From NCBI GenBank assembly GCA_900088475.1, contig FLMG01000941.1, positions 186,001 through 250,000 of the forward strand: DNA of 64,000 nucleotides. The letters are read 5' to 3'. This stretch comes from Hyphochytrium catenoides. Taxonomy: Eukaryota; Protista; Hyphochytriomycota. This document shows, piece after piece, positions 18,041 through 64,000 of the stretch. The notes beneath the pieces are model-generated. The model was not told where the DNA came from. It saw only the letters and a list, made by a program, of their open reading frames with translations, and did not search any database. Each line of letters opens with the position of its first letter. The first letter of the stretch is position 1. A program made the position numbers and the translations under genes.

Positions 18041-19264
18041 ATGTCTTGATGTGGCGACCTGTTCAACCGGTATTATCATGGGTTCATTGTTGCCTGTGCT
18101 TCTCTCAGGCAAGATTGGCTTCGACGCTTAAGGCCGCGATGCTGCTGCCCTCGTCATAGTGAGCGTGAGGAATGCACGAAGGACACAGCTCGGAAAGAGT
18201 GCTGTTAACCCTTTACTTCGCCGCGTTTGTCCTGGGTGGGCATCTTTGTACTAGTAGCAGCTGTAGTGAGATGGAGGTAGAATTTCATTTTGTACACTAG
18301 AGAATCTAATGATAAAGTTCTTCGTGCCTTTCCCTCTTCCCTAGATGTGTCTCACGCGCAACTGCCCGTTCGCAGTTGCATGTTAGCAAACTATCTCAGC
18401 CAGTTCGGATCCGATGCTCCAAAGTTTAGCACCGCTCATCAGCTGTCCATAGATCCACGCTCAACTTTAGTGACAGTCTAGGGTCACGCCAAGGATCAGT
18501 AGTCGTTGGTGTCACTTTATTCGGAGTGCTAAAGAGTCACAATAACCTTCTTGTCATGGTCGAGAAGTGCTCTCTAGAGGTTGCCACTCATGAGACAATG
18601 GAGCACGATATGTAGCAAGTCAGGCATCTTTCATCTATCTCATAAAGTGCTAAGAGCACAAGCTCGGCTGCTCAAATGGTATAGGTTGCAGCAGAAGCGT
18701 CAAACAAACAGCTATCAGTCTAATGCTAAGCTATCCATTTGCAGCAGCACCATGTGGCGCAAAATGAACGCTAGGCTGATGTTAGCCCACAAGTTCCCAC
18801 TTGTTCTTGAGTCCACCATCAGGATCCCATCATAGACCTATGTAGTCATCCTCTTCAGGTGCTGGCTTGCTGGCAGGCAAGGTGTTTGTCTGACCTCATC
18901 TACTCTTCGATTCAGGGCATTCTAACTGACGCTAGGCACACTCTTGCAGGAGGAGGACAGAGTGAGACATCTCCACTCCTTCTTTGGCTTGGGCCAGCTT
19001 CTTGAAGCGGCTTCTATGCCATCAATGCTATCATTCAATAGCCTCTCACTCCTTGAATATCATGCACCATTGCCGGTGTGCCATCCATCTTCTTCGCAGT
19101 AACGTGCCATGAGAGAGGGAGATAGCTTGATAATGACGAGCGGCTCTGCCGTCAATGGAACGCTGAGACGATGGTTCATGACTATCGAACGGTCAGCTAA
19201 GAGATGAAGACCGTTGTTATCGCATTCAACAGTGTTGCTAGAGGGGAGGCGTTCTTTAGGATAG

Positions 19265-19939
19265 GAAAGAGAGAGAGAGAGAGAGAGAAAGTTTCAGGAC
19301 AGGACACAGATGGATCAGAGAGAGAATAGGTATGAGAAAGAGGAGAGAGCTTGAAGAGAGCAGAAGCAGAGAGAGAGAATTGGTGAATATGGTGAAGAGA
19401 GAGAGAGAGAGAATAGAGAGAGAGAGGAGAGAGAGAGAGAGAGGAGAGAGAGGAGAGAGAGAGAGAAAAAGAAAGAGAGATAGAAAGAGAGAGAGAGTGA
19501 GAGGGAGAGAGAGAATGAGAGGGAGAGAAAGAGTGGGAGAGAGAGTGAGAGAGAGAGAGAGAGGGGGAGAGAGAGAGAGAAAAAGAGAGAGAGAGAGAGA
19601 AAGAGAGGAAAAATTTTCTCATCAAAGAACCTTTTCATAACTAATCGTCAATACCCACCCGCCGGTATCAGGCTCCTAAACATAACATGGGGGGTAATCA
19701 TGTAGAACGCCCACCCATCCTCGAATAAACCACTGTGCTAGCCGTTAGCTGCTATACTCCACCCCTCTCATGGGTTCTTTTTGTCACGATAACTCTCCAT
19801 CTCTCTCTTTCTCTCTCTCCCTCTCTCTCTNNNNNNNNNNNNNNNNNNNNNNNNNNNNNNNNNNNNNNNNTCTCTCTCTCTTTAGTTCTATTTCTCTCTT
19901 CCTCTCATCCTCTCTTCCCCGCTCTCTTTCCCTCTCTTC

Positions 19940-19972
<33 letters not shown>

Positions 19973-19985
19973 CCTCTCTCTCTCT
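19265..19985. repeat. (GA)n tract, about 170-bp unique island, then (CT)n tract (partly N-masked)
   Basis: Read directly. Confidence 0.9.
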
Positions 19986-20493
19986 GCTGTAGCTCTCCTC
20001 CTGCATTCTGGTTCTGCTGCTCTGTCTCTTGACATCTTATGCCCTCCTTCCCCTTTGCTTCATTCCTTCTGTCTGTAGAACGTACGGAGAGAGGCACAGC
20101 GTTTTTGCTGTGGCACAACAGCGAGGAGGAACTGCTTGTCATGCTGTTGCCAGGAACGGCAACACTGACAGCGATCATAGGAGAGAAGGCGCTGGCAAGG
20201 AGAAGAAGAGGACGGCAGGAGAGACCGCAGCCCAGCCTAGCTAGTGCAGGAGAGAGAGGGAAGAGGAGATAGAGAGCGCACAGTATCAGACGTTACGGAT
20301 CGCCGCCTTCAGGGCCAGCCGAATGACTTCACCTCTGCCGAAGAGAGACTCTCAAAACCTCTAGGAAGTCTCTCTCCATCGAGCTCGTCTAGTGATTACT
20401 TCTAGGGAGATTAGAGGAAGAGAGGGGAGCCGAAAGAGAGAGAGAAGAAGAGAGCCTATCTCTGCTCCTTCATCTCCTCCTTCACTCCTAACC

Positions 20494-23400
20494 ATGGCGT
20501 CGGGGTCAGAGCCTCCACCGCCTTCTCCTCCTGTCTTCGTTCACGGCCATTCCTATGATCCCAAACTGCACAGTGGCGCTCCTCTCCTGTATCACGCGCC
20601 TTCAGAGGGAGCCGTCCCTCGCCCACGGCATCAGACGATGGCGCTAGACGGGCCTGTGGAAGAAGAGACTCAGTTGCAGACAGTGCTCTTCCAGGTGCAG
20701 ACGGCGCTAAAGACAGATCTAGGACTGATCGAGAAGCTGATACCTTTGCAGAAAGACAACCCAAGCCCTGAAAAAGTTTTGATCTTTCACTCTCCGGACT
20801 ACCATGAGCGCTCTAGACTGCTAATTATTATGTCCAATCAGTATCCAGGCATCTGGAGCCGCAGTCTCATCTCTAAGGGCGTCAATGACAGCGGGTCTAT
20901 GATGCCTTACCTTAAAAAAGCGAGGAGAGAAGGCTATGGAGTCATTGTTCTCAATCCAGCAGGAGCGGCAGACGCTGCCCGCCTCTTCGGTGTGCAGTTC
21001 AAGGGCAAAACAGCAGCGGATGTCCATGTAGAGATTGTATGGGACGAGCTAGTGAAGCCTCTCGCTTGTGATCTGTACGTGTTGGGCTATGCAAGGGGAG
21101 GCCAGTACGTCAAGCATCTGGTGCAGTATGATGGGGGAGAAGGGGCATTGGAAGACAGACTGAGGGCCATCGCTCTTATAGAAAGCAGTCACATGATGAC
21201 CAAGCAGGATTCAGACTTCGTCCGGTCCGTCTTCTCATCCAAGGCCACGGCGTGGATGAAGGATGATCACGAGATAGGGTCATTAATCTCAGATAAGTAT
21301 CGCCTGGGCTGCACATGTTTGTCATCAGGACCAGTTCAAGCCTTCAAGGACAGCAAGAACTCTGCCTGGATTATCAACCAGGTAGGAAAACTCTGCCAAG
21401 GAGGAGTATGGCTCGTCCCGGTAGCGGAGCAACGCCCTAACTCCTGTGAAGCTTGATCGTCTTCTCTTTCTTCTTCTACTGCTTATTTGACTTTGCGTTC
21501 TCTCTCTCCTTCGGCGGCATGAGCAGGTTCTTGTTCAGGTCTTTCTCTCCTTCGAAGCGAGATTTGATGGCGAGCGCAACTCTTCATCATCCAGCTCGCA
21601 GCGATCGTCCAAGCCCGAGAACACTGAGAGTATCGAGCGGCTCGTGGGAAAGGTAACGCTGCGCTCTTGCGCTTGCATGATGTCTGCAAATTGCTATCTT
21701 TTGACTTTTCAATGTTCAACCTCGTACATGCACCCCTTAGTAGCCCTTCCACTTATTGTTTCAGAGCTGCGCTCTCAACCTCGTCCTCACAACGCCTGGG
21801 ATGTGCCACTCATCTTGTTTTGACACAGATCAAGCGCCGTCTGGTGCATGACTATAGTTTCCGGAAGTACCAAGTCCCTCTGGCGCGAGATGGCACAGGC
21901 GCTCTACAGCAGGTTCCTCTGCTAGTCACCTCCAATTATAAAACAAGCAAGAAGATCCTTGTTATCTTCTCCAGCAGCTTCATGGGCGTCTGGAGTCGCT
22001 CCGCACTTTTGGAGGGAGATGAAGGAGCAGGCAGCATGCTGCAGTTCATCCAGGAGGCTTCCTCTCTCTCCTTCGCCATCATTATCGCCAACTTCTACGA
22101 AGTGGTGGACGTGGCGCGGCTAAGTGGCTCGATGAGCTGTGCCACGGCTATCGACAACCACATCAAGATCATCTGGGAAGACTTCGTGAGCCAGAACCCC
22201 TCCGCAGACCTTTTCTTCTTTGGCTTCTCGAAGGGCGGACAGTATTTGAAACGATTTATCGAGGTAAGGGCAAAAGATGTACTGAAGCAAGGGGTTGGGG
22301 GCTCCTTCGACGAACTTTTCGTTTTCGAAGTTAACAGCAGAACCTGCCGTGTGCCACTCTACGTTCTGATCACCTTGGTAGGTCTACGACCGCAGTGAAG
22401 AGTTAAACCAGCGCGTGCGGGCAATCGCCTTCCTAGAAAGTAGTCACTGGGTGGACTTCAAGGATACATACTATGTCAGGCATATGCTTGCCAGAAAGGC
22501 GGTGGCATGGGTTCTATCAAGGTATGTGGCTGGTGCCTCCTGCCTAGTCTCTGCTTCGGCTGGTCAGCACATTGCTCGAGGCCCTGTGCTTGCTTCTGTA
22601 GCCTCTTAAGCTTAGATCGTCAGCTAACAGCGGTCACACTTTACTTCTCATTCCTCCCACAGAAAACCCCCTGCCACAAAGCTTACCGACTACCAGCGCA
22701 CCCTGGGATGTGTTACTCTTTCTGCGGGTGAGCTTTCGAACATCAGTGGGAACTACGTCTACCTGATGCAGAGCGTCCTCCCCATGCTCTTTGGAGCATT
22801 TCTCGCTAGGCTCGGGCCGTCTGTAGCTTCACAGCTGGCTAAGGTGAGCAGGACATTGAGGAGGAGAGGTTAACGAGGGATGTATCTAGATAGTTCAAAG
22901 GAAAGGCATGTGGTAGGGACTAGATAGCTTCGGATCTTCGTCAAAGTATTACCGCTTATCTATGCCTACTTAGTTCTTCATATTTGTGTTGCTGGCTATC
23001 TATGTTCGTGCCGCTTGCCGCCTTGACCTCGCGTTCTCAGATCTGCAGGCGCCGTTTCAACCTCAAACTAAAGTTTCGCGGCTCTGTTCATCGCTGACTC
23101 CGCTCTTTCTAAATGTCTCTTCGCCGTCTTCAAACCTTGCTGCTCGATACTATTCTTTTTCCCGGCGTCCCCTTAGAAGCAGGCAGGGCGCTGCGCAATT
23201 TGTTGCAAACCCTTCAAGCTGTTCACCTCAAAACAGCGATGCAGCTGGTGCAGGAATGTCTGCTGTGCATATGAAAATATGGAGGTCATGGAGGTGAAGC
23301 ACTCAAAAGTGAAGCTCTGTCCCGTCTGCAAGGTTCTTCCTCTCCTCATGAGCGAGGGAGAGTCGTCGTTGGCTGCCTCTTTAGGTCTAGGGGGAGGAGG

Positions 23401-25660
23401 AGGAAGAGAACCAACGGAGAAAGCAACGAAGGATCATCAGCTGTTTAACAACAACAACAATGGAACGAGAAGTGCAATGACTTCTCTGTGTATCCGGCAG
23501 CCTTTTGAGGACTCCTCGACTCAATCTACAATGCTGGATGACTTTGAGATAGTAAAGCTCATTGGCAAGGGGGCATGCGGGAGAGTGAAGCTTGTTAGAA
23601 AGGTGAGGCAACTAAGCGCGCACGCAGGGCTTAGAGTGAGCCATAGACGGAGACGTAAGAATGGCTATACTGGTCAGAGAGATGGTTGAAGGAAGTAGAG
23701 AAGGAGGGAAGGCAGAGAGAGGGGTGTTCAGAGGGTGGGAGTCGGAAATAGAGACAGATAGCATGTATGAACAGCAGAAAGAGGGAGAGGCAGAGAGAGG
23801 AAGAATGTATCGTCTTGTCTCTCACCACCCGCCGTCCTGTTCGAAGCAGAAAACAGGGAAAGATGAAGGCATGCTGTACGCTATGAAATCTCTGCGGAAG
23901 AAGCGCATCGTGGAACTGGGACTGGTAGAGGCTACAAAGTTGGAGAGAAGGATTATGTCCAGAGTAAGGAGGAAGACTGCCGGTTGCTGGACCTCTCCTA
24001 CCAAGTTGTCTCCTCCCTCTTACTTCACTAAGAATCCTCTATATGCTCTCTCCAGCCTTGACGAGCTGTGGGAGGCTTGTTCCTCCTCTCGGACTCATTC
24101 TACCTCTCTCTTCTCCGTCTCTCCTTCCTCAAGCATCTCCTCTTTTGCAATGGCTAAGGTTGTATGGCCTCCCCCTTCGCTCACTTGCAGACGAACCATC
24201 CGTACATTTGTGCCTTGCGGTACGCCTTTCAGACAGAGAGTAAGCTGTACCTGCTTCTGGACTACTATCCAGGTGGAAACCTCCTCGATCTTTTGAGAAG
24301 AGTCAGACGGAGAGACATCTCGGCACAGCAGATCAGACTCTATCTCGCAGAGGTGGTGTCCGCTTTGGCACACGTGCATCAGGAGGGCATTATGTACAGG
24401 TAACAAGGGTCCTATGAATCTGACCTCCTCCTTTCCTCTCATGACATTTGGCTGTTCTATCTTCGCTTCGTTGGCCATCATGCTTTGGTCTCTCCCGTAT
24501 ACCTTCCGTTTCTATCCTATTCTCTTTCATCGCCTTATAAACGATCTGGGCATATCACACAGGGATGTCAAGCTCGAGAATGTCCTAGTAGGAGCTGACG
24601 GACACGTCGCCTTAACGGACTTTGGCATGTCGAAAGATCTGAAGCTTTTTGGAGGGGAAGACAGAGCGACCACCATGCTGGGAACATTTCAGATGATGGC
24701 GCCTGATATATTGAATGGCAAAGGGTATACGAAAGCTGTGGACTGGTGGGCTCTCGGCTGTATGATGTTCGAGCTCATTGGAGGACAGCTGCCCTTCAGG
24801 TAACAGAGACAGTAAATTCATGTGTAGCTCTATCGCACGTGCTTTCGTGGAAAACGGAAAGGAGAGAGAGGGAGAGAGGGTGCTCGGAAAAAGTACCTTC
24901 AGCTCAGGAACTGGGGACACGACTTGGTTTGAACTACGAGTAGAAATGGAAAGAGAGAGACAGAGACAGAGACAGAGACAGAGACAGAGAGGGGCAGAGA
25001 CCACTGGCGGGAACTTATGGCTGATGATGCGTGGACAGAGAAGATGTACGTATAGATTCTCTCTGTAGAGGATTAACTCCAAGTGTCTATTCCATCTACA
25101 GAGGAAAGAATCACTCAGAAATTGAGAAGGAGATCCGAAACGCGCCTCTAGTGTTTAATGACCGCTGGAATGGAGATGTTGCTGCTAAGGATCTCGTCAT
25201 GCGTCTTCTGGATAGGAATGCGTCCTCGCGCATCGGGAGCGGTGCTAACGGCCATGAGGATGTTATGTCTCATCCCTACTTCAGAGACATTGATTGGGCC
25301 GCGCTGATGAGGAAAGAGATTACGTTCCCAGGGCAAGAGGCTTTTGCAGCGAAGCACATCCGGCCCATGACCACTGAGGATGTGATGGAAGTCTTGATGG
25401 CCAGTAGGAATGTTCCAGTGGACACCCCAGACCATGCTGAATCGGTGCTAGAAAGCCGATTCTCAGAGTTCGAGTTCACACGGCCGAGCTTAGATGAGGG
25501 CAACCCCGAGGACGAGGAAGGGCTCAAAGTCTATGGTGAGATTGAAGACTTGGCAACGACAAAGCAGCTGGTGGAGAATGCGGCGATAGACGAGCTGGAA
25601 GAACTCAGGGAGCTAAGCCTGCAGCCCCATGGGCGAAAGGGTAGCCAGCGGTCGCTGTAG
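20494..25660 (+). CDS. Multidomain protein: two Arb2/FAM172-like alpha/beta-hydrolase domains + degenerate FYVE-like Zn finger + AGC (RSK/S6K-like) Ser/Thr kinase
   Basis: Ten GT-AG exons join in frame by eye. Repeat 1: GIWSRSLI..SGSMMPYLKKARREGYGVIVLNP..HVEIVWD..GYARGG..RAIALIESSH. Repeat 2: GVWSRS..GSMLQFI..HIKIIWED..GFSKGG..RAIAFLESSH. Zn finger: CAIC..F.LF..RCSWC..VC..CPVC. Kinase: GKGACG, YAMK, YRDVKLEN, DFG, DWWALG. Confidence 0.85.
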
Positions 25661-27130
25661 ACTAGCAGCCAGCCTTTGATGTGGTTCGCTTGAGAGAGAG
25701 ATCTCTCTCTCTTCGCTTTTGTAAGCTCCTCAGCTTACGGCAGAGTCATTTCTCTTTCTGTTATCTCTTGATCTTTCTTCCCTACACTACCCTCTCTCTC
25801 TCTCTTTCTTTCTTTCTCTCTCTCTCTCTCTTTTTCTCTTTCCAGTTCACTGACTGCCTGCATGCACGCGTTGGTCTGTTCTCTCTATCTCGCCCTATTG
25901 TCGCAGTGAAGGTCGATTGGGTTCCAAGAGTTTTTCATCTAAGTTATTATGAACTATTGTTTCCTTTCTCGGCGCCTGAAGGAAGGCCCTTCGCTGACTA
26001 ACACACTGTTCCAAGACTATTGATCAGTGGCACGAGTATCCAGCCACCGGGTAGAGCCCTTAGTCAGCCTTAGCTCTGTCTCAACTCAGAAACGACAGGC
26101 ATCTGAGTAATTTAGATTATGGGGCTGGAACTCTACTGGCTGTGGAAAAGGATAGAGAACAAAAGAACGGTTCTGGGAGGAGACCGGGCCGAAGAATTCT
26201 AGTGCTGGGTGGACACAGAAAAGCCATTGACAGCATACGTTTTCTTGTCCTTCTGATCCTCCCCACCTCCTTATTACCTCTTCCCTGCGCTACCGACGGT
26301 ACAGGGCTTCAGGTTGAGGATGGACGAGAGATCACACGAGGCTCTCCTGAGAAGATTGTGCCTCATACTTGGCCTCGTACGTTCATAAAAGTCATTGACC
26401 TGAGACGTTGTACACTATCCTGGAGACTCAAGCTAGGGACCAAAGCCTATCGCATCTTCTTGAGCCCTCGGACTGGAGAAGAATGACGGCGCCATAGGCT
26501 CGCTGCGTGCGCCCAGACGCAGCTTGAAGACACGATGACGATGGAAGGATTCTGAGCTTTTGCAGAAGGCAAAGATTCTGACGTGACTCCCAGACAACGA
26601 TGCCTAGTCTACTTCCCGTATTATTACGGTCGCTAGGGTCCTGATATGTTAGAACTAGAGCTATCCCGTCGGGTGTATTATTCTGAAGCGTTTCCTTGAG
26701 ATAAAGAGGAAAGAAGTTGGGGGAGACAGAGTAGGGGTAGAGACACAGTGCTCTTTACGTTAAAGTAAGGGTAGGCCGAGAGAAAGAGCAAGAATGAGAT
26801 ATGTTTGGAGAGAAGAGAAGATTGTGCGATCTTCAGAACGGAACCGCCCTGTCCTTCAGAGATCTTCCGCTTCCTCTGGCAAGTTCGGATGCAGATCGCA
26901 TTCTGAAGCTTTCTGCCTTTCTCTAAGGAACTAAGGCACAAGAGCGCTGATTCTCATTCGAGTCACAGGTGACACAGCTTTTCCTAGATATGTTCATCTT
27001 GCAATGTCTATCTGTTCCCAGCAGTTCGCTGACCCCCTGCTCATATTGACCTCCCCTCGCTCACTTGACTGCATTGTTGATGCTGACCTATCTTCTGCTG
27101 AAGTGCGAATTGCAACGTGAAGTCACAAGC

Positions 27131-28728
27131 ATGGTGTTCAGTAGGACCTTGGCAAGATCGGCTGTGGCCATTAGGAGAGTAAGTCCAAGACCTAAATGCT
27201 CAATTGTGGCCGGGATTCAGGGTTAATCTTCCTAACTCAAGTCCTGCCTGCCATATCGATGGCTGCTTTAGCCTAGAATGCCATGAATTCACTTCTTACT
27301 TGCCTCTCTCCCCTCATCAGGCCGCCGCATCGGGCAAAACGGCAGTTGCATTCCGAGCATCAGCCCTTTCGCTGAAGCAGGAGGCTCTTCCTTCACTATC
27401 CCTCCTGCCATCTTCTCTTCAATCCTCCTCGTTCACTTCGTTCACCTCACCGCTGAGAGACGATGACTTCTCCTACGACTTCACTTCCATCACCTATCCT
27501 CCTCCAGAGGCGGCCATTGGAGAGATGGCGCCGTCTTTCTCTGCTCCAGCGGTGATTGACGGAGAGATCTCCTCTCTTTCCCTTGACGACTTCAGGGGAA
27601 AGTGGGTTGTTCTTTTTTTCTATCCCAAGGTAACCAAAGACTGAGCTGCTCTTCTTTTTTGCTTGGGGATCACCTTACGATCGTTCTTTGGTTATCGGCC
27701 CAGAAGAATCGGCTGACATCTCTCGCTAAACCTTTCCGCGTCCGAGGTGACGGCTACTGACGGTCCTTCTTCTCTTCCTTACACTCGCTTTTGCTCCGGT
27801 TCTCCCCTTACCCACTTTCTTTGTGTTCTAGGACTTCACTTTCGTGTGCCCGACGGAGATCATCGCCTTTTCTGACAGATCCAAGGAGTTCGAAGCACTC
27901 GGCGCACAAGTCATCGCAGCAAGCACTGACACTGAAGAAGTGCATCTTGCATGGATCAGGTAAAAGAGAATAAAGAGAGAGAGACACGAGAGGGCAGAGG
28001 AGCGGCAGCCGAACTAGATGCTCTGGGACGAGCGGGATGAGTGATAGGAGGCATATAGTGAATGAGCTTTATAGAGACTGGAGACGCATGTGGGCAGAGA
28101 GGCAAAAATTCTCTGTTGTTTCCTCCTCCTCTCTTCCTCCTTCCTCTGTAACTCCGACCTCGTTTCTTCATTCGTTCAGAACCCCTCGCAAACAGGGTGG
28201 TCTAGGGAAGATGCAGATCCCTATCATCGCAGATACCACCAAGATTATAGCAGCCAAATATGGAGTGCTCCTTCCCGACCAAGGCGTCGCCCTGCGTGGT
28301 CTGTTCCTCATTGACCCTGATGGAGTGCTACAGCAGATCACCATGAACAATCTTCCAGTGGGAAGAAGCGTGGAGGAGACGCTGAGACTGCTGCAGGTAA
28401 GAAAGGGGGCTTTAAGAAGGGGGCAAAAGGTTAGGGGTGGCTGCCGACATCTGGAGAGGAGAAGCTGATACAAGGACCAGGTGAAAGATCGGATGAGAAA
28501 GAGACAAGGCCAACATTGAACGCTTAAGTTCGCCACCGTATATAATCCATAGAAGGGGATTAGTGTAGCTTGGTCACAAGTTGCATAAGAGCCGGAATCG
28601 AGACGAAGAGGAAACACGACAGCTAAGGGCGAAGCACCATTTCCCCTCAGTGATAGAGATGATAGACTTCATTGGGCTTTGATCTTCCGCATAAGTCTTA
28701 CATACTTCTTTCTCTTTCGTTGGTTTCT

Positions 28729-28792
<64 letters not shown>

Positions 28793-29643
28793 ACGGTCTC
28801 GCGACCCTCTCTTATCTATGTCTCCTCTTTAACGCCATCCTTGGCATGCAACTGTTGGATTTAGGCTTTCCAATTCACTCGCGAACACGGAGAAGTCTGC
28901 CCAGCAAACTGGACTCCAGGAGCAAAGACGATGGTTCCCAATCCTGAGGATAGCATGGTAAACACTCTTGCCTTCCTTGTATCCGGTCGTCTTTGTTGCT
29001 ATTTGCTGGTCTGTCTGTCTCTCTCTCTCTGTCCCTCTAGAATATGAATTGTCTCCTTCTGGGAATATGTTTCCGTGTCTATGAGGTCCTGTAGGAGAGA
29101 CTACTTCTTGGTCTTCCTAGCCCTCCTGCTAACGGGGTTCATCATAGACCTACTTCGCCTCCGGAGCTACAGAGGCCCAGGAGGAGGAGGCTGCAGCAAC
29201 CTCGGTGCAAGAGATCACCTCTCCCACTGACTTCAAGGAGGCAGTGAAGGGAAAGAAGGTTGTCGTCAAGTTCTATGCCCCGTGGTGCGGCAAGTGCCAG
29301 CAGATCAAGCCTTACTATGAGAAGCTAGCAGCTGAGAATTCCGACGTGGTAAGATGTCCTTGCTTGGGATGCGTTATGCTTCTTCGGCATGCCGGCTGCC
29401 TCGTGTAGTGGCTGCTCATTGCTTACAACTGATGTAGACAGTCCCTAACCTTCTACTCTCGTTTGCCCCAACCAGACGTTCTTGGCATGCAATACTGACG
29501 ACCCTCAGCTGAACCAGCTGTTTGAGGGTTTGGGCATCTCTGCTATGCCTGCCTTCGTCACCTTCAAAAAGGGCAAGCAGGCTGGAGAACCTATCATTGG
29601 CTATAAGAAGAAACCTCTTGCGGAAGCCGTAGAGAAGCTTTAG
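27131..29643 (+). CDS. Typical 2-Cys peroxiredoxin (AhpC/Prx1) fused to a C-terminal thioredoxin, with putative mitochondrial presequence
   Basis: [16 protein letters not shown]; [14 protein letters not shown]; GGLG; EVCPANW; M-TYF; then in the same exon [10 protein letters not shown]. Last exon has AMPAF and ends at TAG 29641-29643. Confidence 0.9.

Positions 29644-62569: not shown

Positions 62570-64000
<1,431 letters not shown>

What the first reader, a model, noticed from the sequence alone, without database searches (positions are those of the whole stretch)
20494..25660. Tandem Arb2/FAM172-like domains + FYVE-like finger + AGC kinase in one protein
Seen: exons at about 20494-21381, 21528-21653, 21829-22263, 22382-22521, 22663-22843 and 23177-23602 splice in frame at GT-AG sites, and the Zn finger and kinase subdomain I share one exon. 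Known: FAM172A/ARB2A and fission-yeast Arb2 are alpha/beta-hydrolase-fold proteins linked to Argonaute, and the related domain of Hda1/Clr3 binds histones. AGC kinases usually carry PH, PX or C1/C2 modules. Inference: this could be a signalling kinase that is regulated by, or targets, Argonaute or chromatin complexes, or that uses hydrolase-fold pockets as ligand sensors. I know of no description of this architecture.
Basis: partly seen in the sequence, partly recalled or inferred. Interest (0 to 1): 0.85.

Follow-up and report, generated by a model that had tools for sequence, protein, structure and literature searches.

The report
AGC kinase with two Arb2 domains
This is a real ten-exon gene for a signalling kinase that carries two Arb2 (dead-hydrolase-like) domains and a small FYVE-shaped zinc finger. 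The one-Arb2 version of this design was described in oomycete water moulds in 2010, so only the doubled Arb2 domain is new.

Summary
Window 20494-25660 (+) gives a ten-exon, all GT-AG model of 1104 aa: Arb2 – Arb2 – FYVE-like finger – AGC kinase. Both Arb2 copies pass Pfam's cut-off. The first folds like the Clr3/Hda1 Arb2 domains. The finger folds like FYVE domains but lacks the PI3P-binding motifs and one of eight zinc ligands. The kinase keeps all catalytic residues.

Reads confirm only two kinase introns. One gene is otherwise inferred:
- One BLASTP alignment (38% identity, E 3e-164) runs from Arb2 #2 through finger and kinase of oomycete proteins, across the 22844-23176 intron.
- Exon 6 and exon 2 have no possible start codon.
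- Exon 2 is conserved in two related species and encodes the last helix of Arb2 #1 and the start of Arb2 #2.

The claim that this architecture is undescribed is wrong. Judelson & Ah-Fong 2010 list Phytophthora AGC kinases with Arb2 and FYVE, and many oomycete proteins carry Arb2 plus a kinase. The window gene is the orthologue of the PITG_16446-type group with an extra N-terminal Arb2. Argonaute, chromatin or ligand-sensing roles are untested. The scan also noted three other Arb2–AGC kinase genes elsewhere in this genome. Verdict: new variant of a known kind, modest interest.

The parts
20494..21381 (+). Exon 1: start codon, disordered N-terminus (aa 1-50) and almost all of Arb2 domain #1 (elbow GYARGG, ESSH)
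   Evidence: Pfam Arb2 3.7e-20. AF2 pLDDT 85, best PDB matches Clr3 and Hda1 Arb2 at Z 16-17. Conservation with relative L001 starts at the ATG and stops at the donor. dN 0.16, dS 2.5.
21527..21652 (+). Exon 2 (corrected borders): last helix of Arb2 #1 (VLVQVFLSFEARF), Ser-rich linker, first part of the N-terminal helix of Arb2 #2
   Evidence: AG/GT borders and phase 0. The block alone aligns to L001 and L002 and its protein frame is conserved. The W..V...F..F.AR helix motif is shared with Arb2 #2 and the oomycete domains. There is no ATG between the upstream stop (21488) and the exon end.
21829..22263 (+). Exon 3: core of Arb2 domain #2 (elbow GFSKGG)
   Evidence: Pfam Arb2 5.3e-14. 32% identical to Arb2 #1, E 4e-40. 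Conserved in L001 and L002.
22382..22521 (+). Exon 4: Arb2 #2 continued (ESSH motif)
   Evidence: Pfam Arb2 profile positions 216-256. Aligns to L002.
22663..22843 (+). Exon 5: C-terminal part of Arb2 #2 (LGCVTLSAG, helix LPMLFGAFLARL)
   Evidence: Collinear with the oomycete proteins.
23177..23602 (+). Exon 6: FYVE-like zinc finger (aa 591-650), low-complexity linker, kinase subdomain I (GKGACG)
   Evidence: Pfam FYVE is only sub-threshold. Homologous to the oomycete finger, 7 of 8 Cys kept. AF2 model pLDDT 79.6, and the top 16 PDB matches are FYVE or FYVE-related. A TAG lies directly upstream and there is no ATG before the finger.
23850..23963 (+). Exon 7: kinase subdomains II-III (YAMK Lys745, Glu764)
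   Evidence: GT-AG borders, phase 0. Motifs.
24191..24399 (+). Exon 8: kinase subdomains IV-VIa
   Evidence: Pfam Pkinase 4.1e-13. Its donor is confirmed by a spliced contig of RNA? run X4.
24563..24799 (+). Exon 9: catalytic loop YRDVKLEN, DFG, activation loop with Thr878, APD
   Evidence: Pfam Pkinase 6.3e-21. Both flanking introns are confirmed by spliced contigs of X4. Motifs.
25102..25660 (+). Exon 10: kinase C-lobe end, AGC tail with hydrophobic motif FSEFEF (aa 1039-1044), acidic tail, stop codon
   Evidence: Its acceptor is confirmed by X4.

Best explanation
One gene encodes a 1104-aa AGC (RSK/AKT/S6K-like) protein kinase. It is the orthologue of the oomycete PITG_16446-type Arb2 – FYVE-like finger – AGC kinases and carries an extra N-terminal Arb2 domain. 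The source genome is probably a hyphochytrid, the sister group of oomycetes; this is inferred, not shown. What is shown: the domain content, the collinearity with oomycete proteins, the Arb2 fold of copy 1, the FYVE-type fold of the finger, and intact kinase catalytic residues. What is inferred about function: the kinase is active and is switched on at its activation-loop Thr (a PDK1-type site). Its hydrophobic motif carries Glu at the phospho-acceptor position, so that regulatory step is probably permanently on. The two Arb2 domains are probably non-catalytic protein-binding modules. Arb2 domains of Hda1, Clr3 and FAM172A form homodimers, so the two copies may pair within one chain in place of the pairing between two chains expected for the single-Arb2 relatives. 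The finger lacks the PI3P pocket, so it more likely acts as a structural or regulatory zinc module between the Arb2 pair and the kinase than as an endosome anchor.
For: Gene model: ten exons, all GT-AG, one ORF. Introns average 206 nt and the first two are not multiples of three.

One gene: a single BLASTP HSP covers model 332-1056 against Aphanomyces P0003 108-821 (38%, E 3e-164) and crosses the exon 5/6 junction. A second HSP (57-352) crosses exon 1/2. There is no ATG upstream of the finger in exon 6 and none in exon 2. In relatives L001 and L002 only the exon blocks are conserved, with the same donors, acceptors and phases, and exon 2 is under purifying selection. Exon 2 holds the conserved terminal helix of Arb2 #1 and the start of Arb2 #2. 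Spliced contigs confirm two kinase introns.

Domains: Pfam, AF2 plus PDB searches, kinase motifs.

Orthology: the kinase clade with the oomycete group has support 100*, with the window gene as its sister. The Arb2 clade has support 100/99*. The GxGACG loop and the finger are shared.

Arb2 dimerisation in Hda1, Clr3 and FAM172A: PMC10205598.
Against: No read or transcript spans exons 1-2-3 or 5-6, and no RNA run of the source organism was listed. An in-frame ATG at 21712 could start a shorter Arb2 #2 – finger – kinase isoform. The tandem region could not be folded, so pairing of the two Arb2 copies within one chain is pure inference. Arb2 #2 keeps a perfect GxSxG elbow, so residual catalysis is not excluded. 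The finger has lost one canonical Cys and may be partly degenerate. No partner or substrate is known for any member of the family.
Confidence: 0.8

Rival explanations
1. There are two adjacent genes, or an internal promoter. One is a stand-alone FAM172/Arb2 protein (exon 1, with or without exon 2). The other is an oomycete-type Arb2 – finger – kinase gene that starts at the in-frame ATG 21712 and reads straight into exon 3.
For: ATG 21712 is in frame with exon 3, with no stop between them. L001 also has an in-frame ATG 36 nt upstream of its exon 3. All 30 or so Arb2-kinases found elsewhere have a single Arb2. No read spans introns 1 or 2.
Against: Exon 2 is conserved as coding sequence in three species. 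In the window it has no ATG and no stop. It carries both the terminal helix of Arb2 #1 and the first helix of Arb2 #2. The sequence upstream of exon 3 is not conserved, and in L002 a TAG stop directly precedes exon 3. Read-through tails after exon 1 differ between species. Introns 1 and 2 are 145 and 176 nt long, so the conserved frames join only by splicing.
Confidence: 0.1
2. The Arb2 domains, at least copy 2, are working serine hydrolases or small-molecule sensors that gate the kinase.
For: Arb2 #2 keeps a canonical nucleophile elbow, GFSKGG, and it is conserved in L001. The fold is alpha/beta-hydrolase-like, and hydrolase-fold receptors such as GID1 are among the structural matches.
Against: Copy 1 has Ala in place of the Ser (GYARGG). 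In the alignment the His of the metazoan-type 'SAG..HE' position is absent from both copies and from all the oomycete kinase-linked Arb2 domains. The solved Arb2 domains are described as lacking a triad and serving protein-protein contacts (PMC11878206).
Confidence: 0.07
3. The protein is an endosomal, PI3P-targeted kinase, with the finger acting as a true FYVE membrane anchor.
For: The finger model matches EEA1, Vps27, Hrs and other FYVE domains best (TM 0.6-0.7). The 2010 kinome paper labels the paralogues' finger FYVE.
Against: Pfam FYVE scores 12.7 bits against a cut-off of 27.8. WxxD, R(R/K)HHCR and RVC are all absent in the window protein, and the 6th Cys is replaced by Tyr. The oomycete orthologues also score below the cut-off and lack the HH pair.
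Confidence: 0.05

Closest known systems
Oomycete PITG_16446-type AGC/RSK kinases (for example P. infestans PInf_016979 = P0195, P. sojae PHYSODRAFT_345221, Aphanomyces euteiches P0003, Albugo candida CCI49691.1, Plasmopara halstedii 'agc protein kinase')
   Same: Collinear Arb2 – FYVE-like finger – linker – AGC kinase. 38% identity over about 725 aa in one HSP, and 59% in the kinase domain. Shared GxGACG glycine loop, GT(F/Y)QMMAP(D/E) activation segment and finger pattern. Kinase clade support 100*, Arb2 clade 100/99*.
   Different: The oomycete proteins have one Arb2 and this gene has two. The oomycete hits seen here mostly appear as uninterrupted ORFs, whereas this gene has nine introns. 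The window finger has lost the 6th Cys and the RR and RVC residues that oomycetes keep.
P. infestans PITG_01365 (FYVE, ARB2) and PITG_06776 (ARB2, C2, FYVE), AGC/AKT class, Judelson & Ah-Fong 2010 (PMC3019232)
   Same: This is the first published description of Arb2 plus FYVE plus an AGC kinase in one protein. The domain order is the same.
   Different: They are paralogous groups with a GKGAFG-type glycine loop and a single Arb2. The 2010 paper states that no orthologue exists in apicomplexans, ciliates or diatoms and did not cover hyphochytrids.
Arb2 domains of class II histone deacetylases Clr3 (5IKK) and Hda1 (5J8J, 6Z6F/6Z6O), and FAM172A/ARB2A
   Same: They give the best structural matches to Arb2 #1 (Z 16-17, about 205 aligned residues) and belong to the same Pfam family as FAM172-type proteins. 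These domains dimerise and bind protein partners.
   Different: Only 11-13% sequence identity, and they are attached to a deacetylase or stand alone rather than to a kinase. Histone or Argonaute binding is not shown for any kinase-linked Arb2.
RSK N-terminal kinase / AKT2 / S6K1 / MSK1 catalytic domains
   Same: These are the closest solved kinases to the orthologue P0003 (E about 1e-76). All catalytic motifs, the activation-loop Thr and an AGC hydrophobic motif are present.
   Different: The N-terminal regulatory module is Arb2 x2 plus a finger instead of a PH domain or a second kinase. The hydrophobic motif has Glu at the phospho-site (FSEFEF), as in atypical PKC and PRK (from my own knowledge).

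Membership tests
Arb2 domain (Pfam PF22749) | Profile match above Pfam's gathering score | tested here: met
   Copy 1 scores 72.8 bits and copy 2 scores 52.6 bits on exon 3 alone, against a cut-off of 26.8.
Arb2 domain (Pfam PF22749) | Alpha/beta-hydrolase-like fold closest to the solved Arb2 domains | tested here: met
   Copy 1 only. AF2 pLDDT 85. Clr3 5ikk Z 16.9 and Hda1 5j8j Z 16.1, above ordinary hydrolases at Z 13 or less. Copy 2 could not be folded because it is split over exons.
Arb2 domain (Pfam PF22749) | Binding to Argonaute or histones, and dimerisation | not testable with these tools
   Known only for Arb2, FAM172A, Hda1 and Clr3. No data exist for kinase-linked Arb2 domains.
Active alpha/beta serine hydrolase | Ser-acid-His triad | tested here: not met
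   By alignment only: elbow GYARGG (no Ser) in copy 1 and GFSKGG in copy 2, Glu at the acid position, and no His at the metazoan-type position in either copy.
FYVE domain (Pfam PF01363) | Profile match above the gathering score | tested here: not met
   12.7 bits against 27.8. FYVE_2 scores 13.9 against 27.2.
FYVE domain (Pfam PF01363) | Eight zinc-binding Cys and the PI3P motifs WxxD, R(R/K)HHCR and RVC | tested here: not met
   Seven of eight Cys are kept, with Tyr at the 6th position. The window has SKQRCSWC in place of RRHHCRxC and KLC in place of RVC, and no WxxD.
FYVE domain (Pfam PF01363) | FYVE-type fold | tested here: met
   AF2 pLDDT 79.6. The top 16 PDB matches are FYVE or FYVE-related (EEA1, Vps27, RUFY, Hrs, rabphilin), TM 0.6-0.7, rmsd 2.5-3.3 Å. 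E-values are weak (0.01-0.6) because the domain is small.
AGC protein kinase | Complete catalytic core | tested here: met
   GKGACG, Lys745, Glu764, YRDVKLEN, DFG and APD are all present. Pfam Pkinase matches exons 8 and 9.
AGC protein kinase | Activation-loop Thr and a C-terminal tail with hydrophobic motif F-x-x-F-(S/T/D/E)-(F/Y) | tested here: met
   Thr878 in TMLGT, and FSEFEF at 1039-1044. Pfam found no Pkinase_C on exon 10, so the tail is divergent.
Oomycete/pseudofungal Arb2 – finger – AGC kinase (PITG_16446 group) | Collinear full-length homology and a common clade for both kinase and Arb2 | tested here: met
   One HSP at E 3e-164. Kinase clade 100*. Arb2 clade 100/99*.
Oomycete/pseudofungal Arb2 – finger – AGC kinase (PITG_16446 group) | Single Arb2 domain | tested here: not met
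   The window gene and its two relatives have two. Every Arb2-kinase among the 150 best library hits has one.

The most novel reading that the evidence does not exclude
The two Arb2 domains pair within one chain, copying the Arb2 homodimer that lets Hda1 and Clr3 engage histones. This would make a monomeric, chromatin-docked RSK/MSK-like kinase, and the single-Arb2 oomycete relatives would be dimerisation-activated versions of the same device. If so, it would be a Pseudofungi-specific route from AGC signalling to chromatin or small-RNA machinery.
Probability: 0.12. Interest if true: 0.55.

Novelty: new variant of a known kind. Interest (0 to 1): 0.3.

Why it matters
Arb2-linked AGC kinases appear to be an innovation of the oomycete lineage. 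No function, partner or substrate is known for them, although they occur in major plant and animal pathogens. This gene extends the family to what is probably a non-oomycete relative and supplies a natural tandem-Arb2 variant. The variant gives a concrete way to ask what the Arb2 module does: does it dimerise, and does a tandem copy replace dimerisation? That is useful for kinome evolution in stramenopiles, but it is not a new kind of system.

Tried and rejected
- RNA evidence. No RNA run of the source organism was listed. The single read-laying run gave spliced support for only two kinase introns, from a run labelled as another organism.
- Full-length homologue search with the spliced protein. 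I used exon 1 and the orthologue P0003 instead.
- Folding the tandem Arb2 region, or Arb2 #2 alone. This was not possible for the same reason.
- Metagenome scan with exon 1. It found no relative.
- PDB sequence search with exon 1. Nothing significant was found, so fold comparison was needed.
Rejected: its borders are not AG/GT, and the other frame is the one conserved in relatives.
- An apicomplexan origin, my first guess from the GA repeats. Dropped: all close homologues are oomycete, and the intron statistics fit Hyphochytrium catenoides.
- Timing of the Arb2 duplication. Unresolved: the maximum-likelihood tree gives A1 outside (A2, oomycetes) at 85/77, and the alternatives are not rejected (p-AU 0.25 and 0.19).
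Full report
**1. What is in the sequence**

The window is eukaryotic and intron-rich. Between 20494 and 25660 on the + strand I built a ten-exon model with canonical GT-AG at every border and one open frame of 1104 aa. The exons are 20494-21381, 21527-21652, 21829-22263, 22382-22521, 22663-22843, 23177-23602, 23850-23963, 24191-24399, 24563-24799 and 25102-25660.

It keeps the overall frame only because its length is a multiple of three, and its own reading frame is wrong. The true exon, 21527-21652, reads VLVQVFLSFEARFDGERNSSSSSSQRSSKPENTESIERLVGK. The nine introns average 206 nt.

**2. Domains**

- *Arb2.* Pfam PF22749 matches exon 1 (E 3.7e-20, 72.8 bits) and exon 3 (E 5.3e-14, 52.6 bits) against a cut-off of 26.8, and exon 4 continues the profile. 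The two copies are 32% identical (E 4e-40).
- *Fold of Arb2 #1.* Exon 1 modelled with 77 homologues gave pLDDT 85 and pTM 0.81. Its best PDB matches are the Arb2 domains of Clr3 (5ikk) and Hda1 (5j8j, 6z6f, 6z6o). Foldseek E-values are 2e-9 to 6e-8. VIA-align Z is 15.3-16.9 over about 205 residues, and ordinary alpha/beta hydrolases follow at Z 13.3 or less.
- *Finger.* The finger (aa 591-650) reaches only sub-threshold Pfam FYVE scores. Its AF2 model has pLDDT 79.6, and its 16 best PDB matches are all FYVE or FYVE-related domains, with TM 0.6-0.7. It keeps 7 of the 8 zinc-binding Cys, with Tyr at the 6th position, and it lacks WxxD, R(R/K)HHCR and RVC. It has a FYVE-type fold but is not a PI3P-type FYVE domain.
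- *Kinase.* The kinase has GKGACG, Lys745, Glu764, YRDVKLEN, DFG, APD, an activation-loop Thr (TMLGT) and an AGC hydrophobic motif FSEFEF with Glu at the phospho-site.

**3. One gene or two**

Reads settle little. No RNA run of the source organism was listed. A run labelled as another organism gave spliced contigs across 24400-24562 and 24800-25101 only. The case for one gene therefore rests on comparison.

(a) A single BLASTP HSP joins model residues 332-1056 to residues 108-821 of Aphanomyces euteiches P0003 (38% identity, E 3e-164). Albugo and Plasmopara proteins give similar HSPs.

(b) Exon 6 is preceded directly by an in-frame TAG and has no ATG before the finger. It must therefore be an internal exon.

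(c) The less obvious junctions are exons 1-2-3, because Arb2 #1 could have been a separate upstream FAM172-like gene. Two contigs of related organisms bear on this: L001, about 72% nucleotide identity, and the more distant L002. They align to the window only at exon 1, exon 2, exon 3 and exon 4, with the same donors, acceptors and phases.
- Exon 2 is 81% identical in protein and 71% in DNA to L001. dN is 0.10 and synonymous sites are saturated.
- In the window it has no ATG and no stop.
- It encodes the conserved last helix of an Arb2 domain. That helix has the motif W..V...F..F.AR, which is also present at the end of Arb2 #2 and of the oomycete domains.
- A Ser-rich linker follows, and then the beginning of the first helix of Arb2 #2.

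So one conserved exon holds the end of one domain and the start of the next.

(d) Introns 1 and 2 are 145 and 176 nt long, so the conserved frames join only by splicing. In L002 a TAG directly precedes exon 3.

The remaining rival is a shorter isoform that starts at the in-frame ATG 21712. I give the two-gene or internal-promoter reading about 10%.

**4. What it is related to**

An exhaustive phmmer search with exon 1 returned 502 hits. After exon-sized ORFs of the two relatives, the best hits are oomycete proteins of 680-960 aa. About 30 of the 150 best hits contain an AGC kinase downstream of the Arb2 domain, and every one of them has a single Arb2. All named members are oomycetes: Albugo, Aphanomyces, Plasmopara, Saprolegnia, Thraustotheca, Achlya, Pythium, Phytophthora, Bremia and Peronospora. 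The ESM Atlas holds a 245-member 'Arb2/Protein kinase' cluster that is mostly Oomycota.

Judelson & Ah-Fong 2010 (PMC3019232) list Arb2 as a novel accessory domain of two P. infestans AGC kinases. Their Table S1 gives PITG_01365 as 'FYVE, ARB2' and PITG_06776 as 'ARB2, C2, FYVE'.

The window gene belongs to a third group, typified by PITG_16446 (AGC/RSK). The 2010 table lists that protein without accessory domains, but its present-day equivalents carry Arb2 and a weak FYVE match.
- In a kinase tree the window protein is sister to this oomycete group, in a clade with support 100*.
- In a careful Arb2 tree both window copies and the oomycete group form a clade at 100/99*.
- Within that clade A1 branches outside (A2, oomycetes) at 85/77, but the alternatives are not rejected (p-AU 0.25 and 0.19).

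The duplication is therefore old: it predates the split of the window species from L001 and L002. Whether it predates the oomycetes is open.

The genome is probably a hyphochytrid. Other first-stage notes call it a non-algal stramenopile with a kalium channelrhodopsin (untested). [quoted passage not shown] This is an inference, not a result. The same notes record three other Arb2–AGC kinase genes elsewhere in this genome. I did not check them.

**5. How it probably works**

Shown: a complete AGC catalytic domain, closest to RSK, AKT and S6K structures through its orthologue; two Arb2-fold domains; and a FYVE-fold zinc module without lipid-binding residues.

Inferred:
- The kinase is active and controlled at the activation-loop Thr. 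The hydrophobic motif mimics the phosphorylated state permanently.
- The Arb2 domains are most likely non-catalytic. Copy 1 has Ala in place of the elbow Ser (GYARGG). Copy 2 keeps GFSKGG. The His found in metazoan-type ARB2A sequences is missing from both copies and from all the oomycete kinase-linked domains. The solved Arb2 domains are described as triad-less protein-interaction modules.
- Arb2 domains of Hda1, Clr3 and FAM172A homodimerise. A reasonable model is that single-Arb2 kinases pair through this domain, and that the tandem version pairs within one chain to form a platform for an unknown partner.

Nothing here tests a link to Argonaute or chromatin.

**6. Verdict**

The architecture class has been published since 2010 and is widely annotated in oomycetes. 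What is new is the second Arb2 domain and the probable non-oomycete host. I rate it a new variant of a known kind, of modest interest.

Noticed in passing
window 19200-20100: Long (GA)n/(CT)n microsatellites surround a run of N (an assembly gap near 19830-19870) just upstream of the gene. Similar GA-rich tracts in intron 9 (24939-25001) and the 3' flank (25785-25900) produce false long-range 'joints' in the DNA runs.
   Followed up: no
window 20300-25900: DNA run X2 (2011) differs from the window at about 1.3% in this gene, while X1 (2017) is identical. Both runs hold two alleles at 21616-21751 (7 differences in 136 nt). This suggests a heterozygous source or two haplotypes.
   Followed up: no
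window 24373-25144: The only spliced reads come from run X4, which is labelled as a different organism (B), yet they are 95-99% identical to the window. The cause may be a mislabelled, mixed or closely related sample.
   Followed up: no
P. infestans PITG_16446 (PMC3019232, Table S1): The oomycete orthologue group of this gene is listed in the 2010 kinome table with no accessory domain. Present Pfam finds Arb2 and a weak FYVE in its equivalents. The published count of two Arb2 kinases in P. infestans is therefore an undercount.
   Followed up: partly
P0012 (Sycon ciliatum ARB2A-like, 617 aa) and P0026 (metagenomic, 702 aa): Tandem Arb2 proteins without a kinase exist elsewhere. The two halves of the sponge protein are almost identical, which points to a recent duplication or an assembly artefact.
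   Followed up: no
P0021 (Aphanomyces astaci, 2041 aa): This protein has two Arb2 domains, but in another strain it is split into neighbouring 1150-aa and 946-aa proteins. It is probably two adjacent paralogues merged by gene prediction.
   Followed up: no
window 27131-29643 and 62570-64000: Other first-stage notes on this window record a peroxiredoxin-thioredoxin fusion just downstream and a PKG-shaped kinase at the window's end. I examined neither.
   Followed up: no
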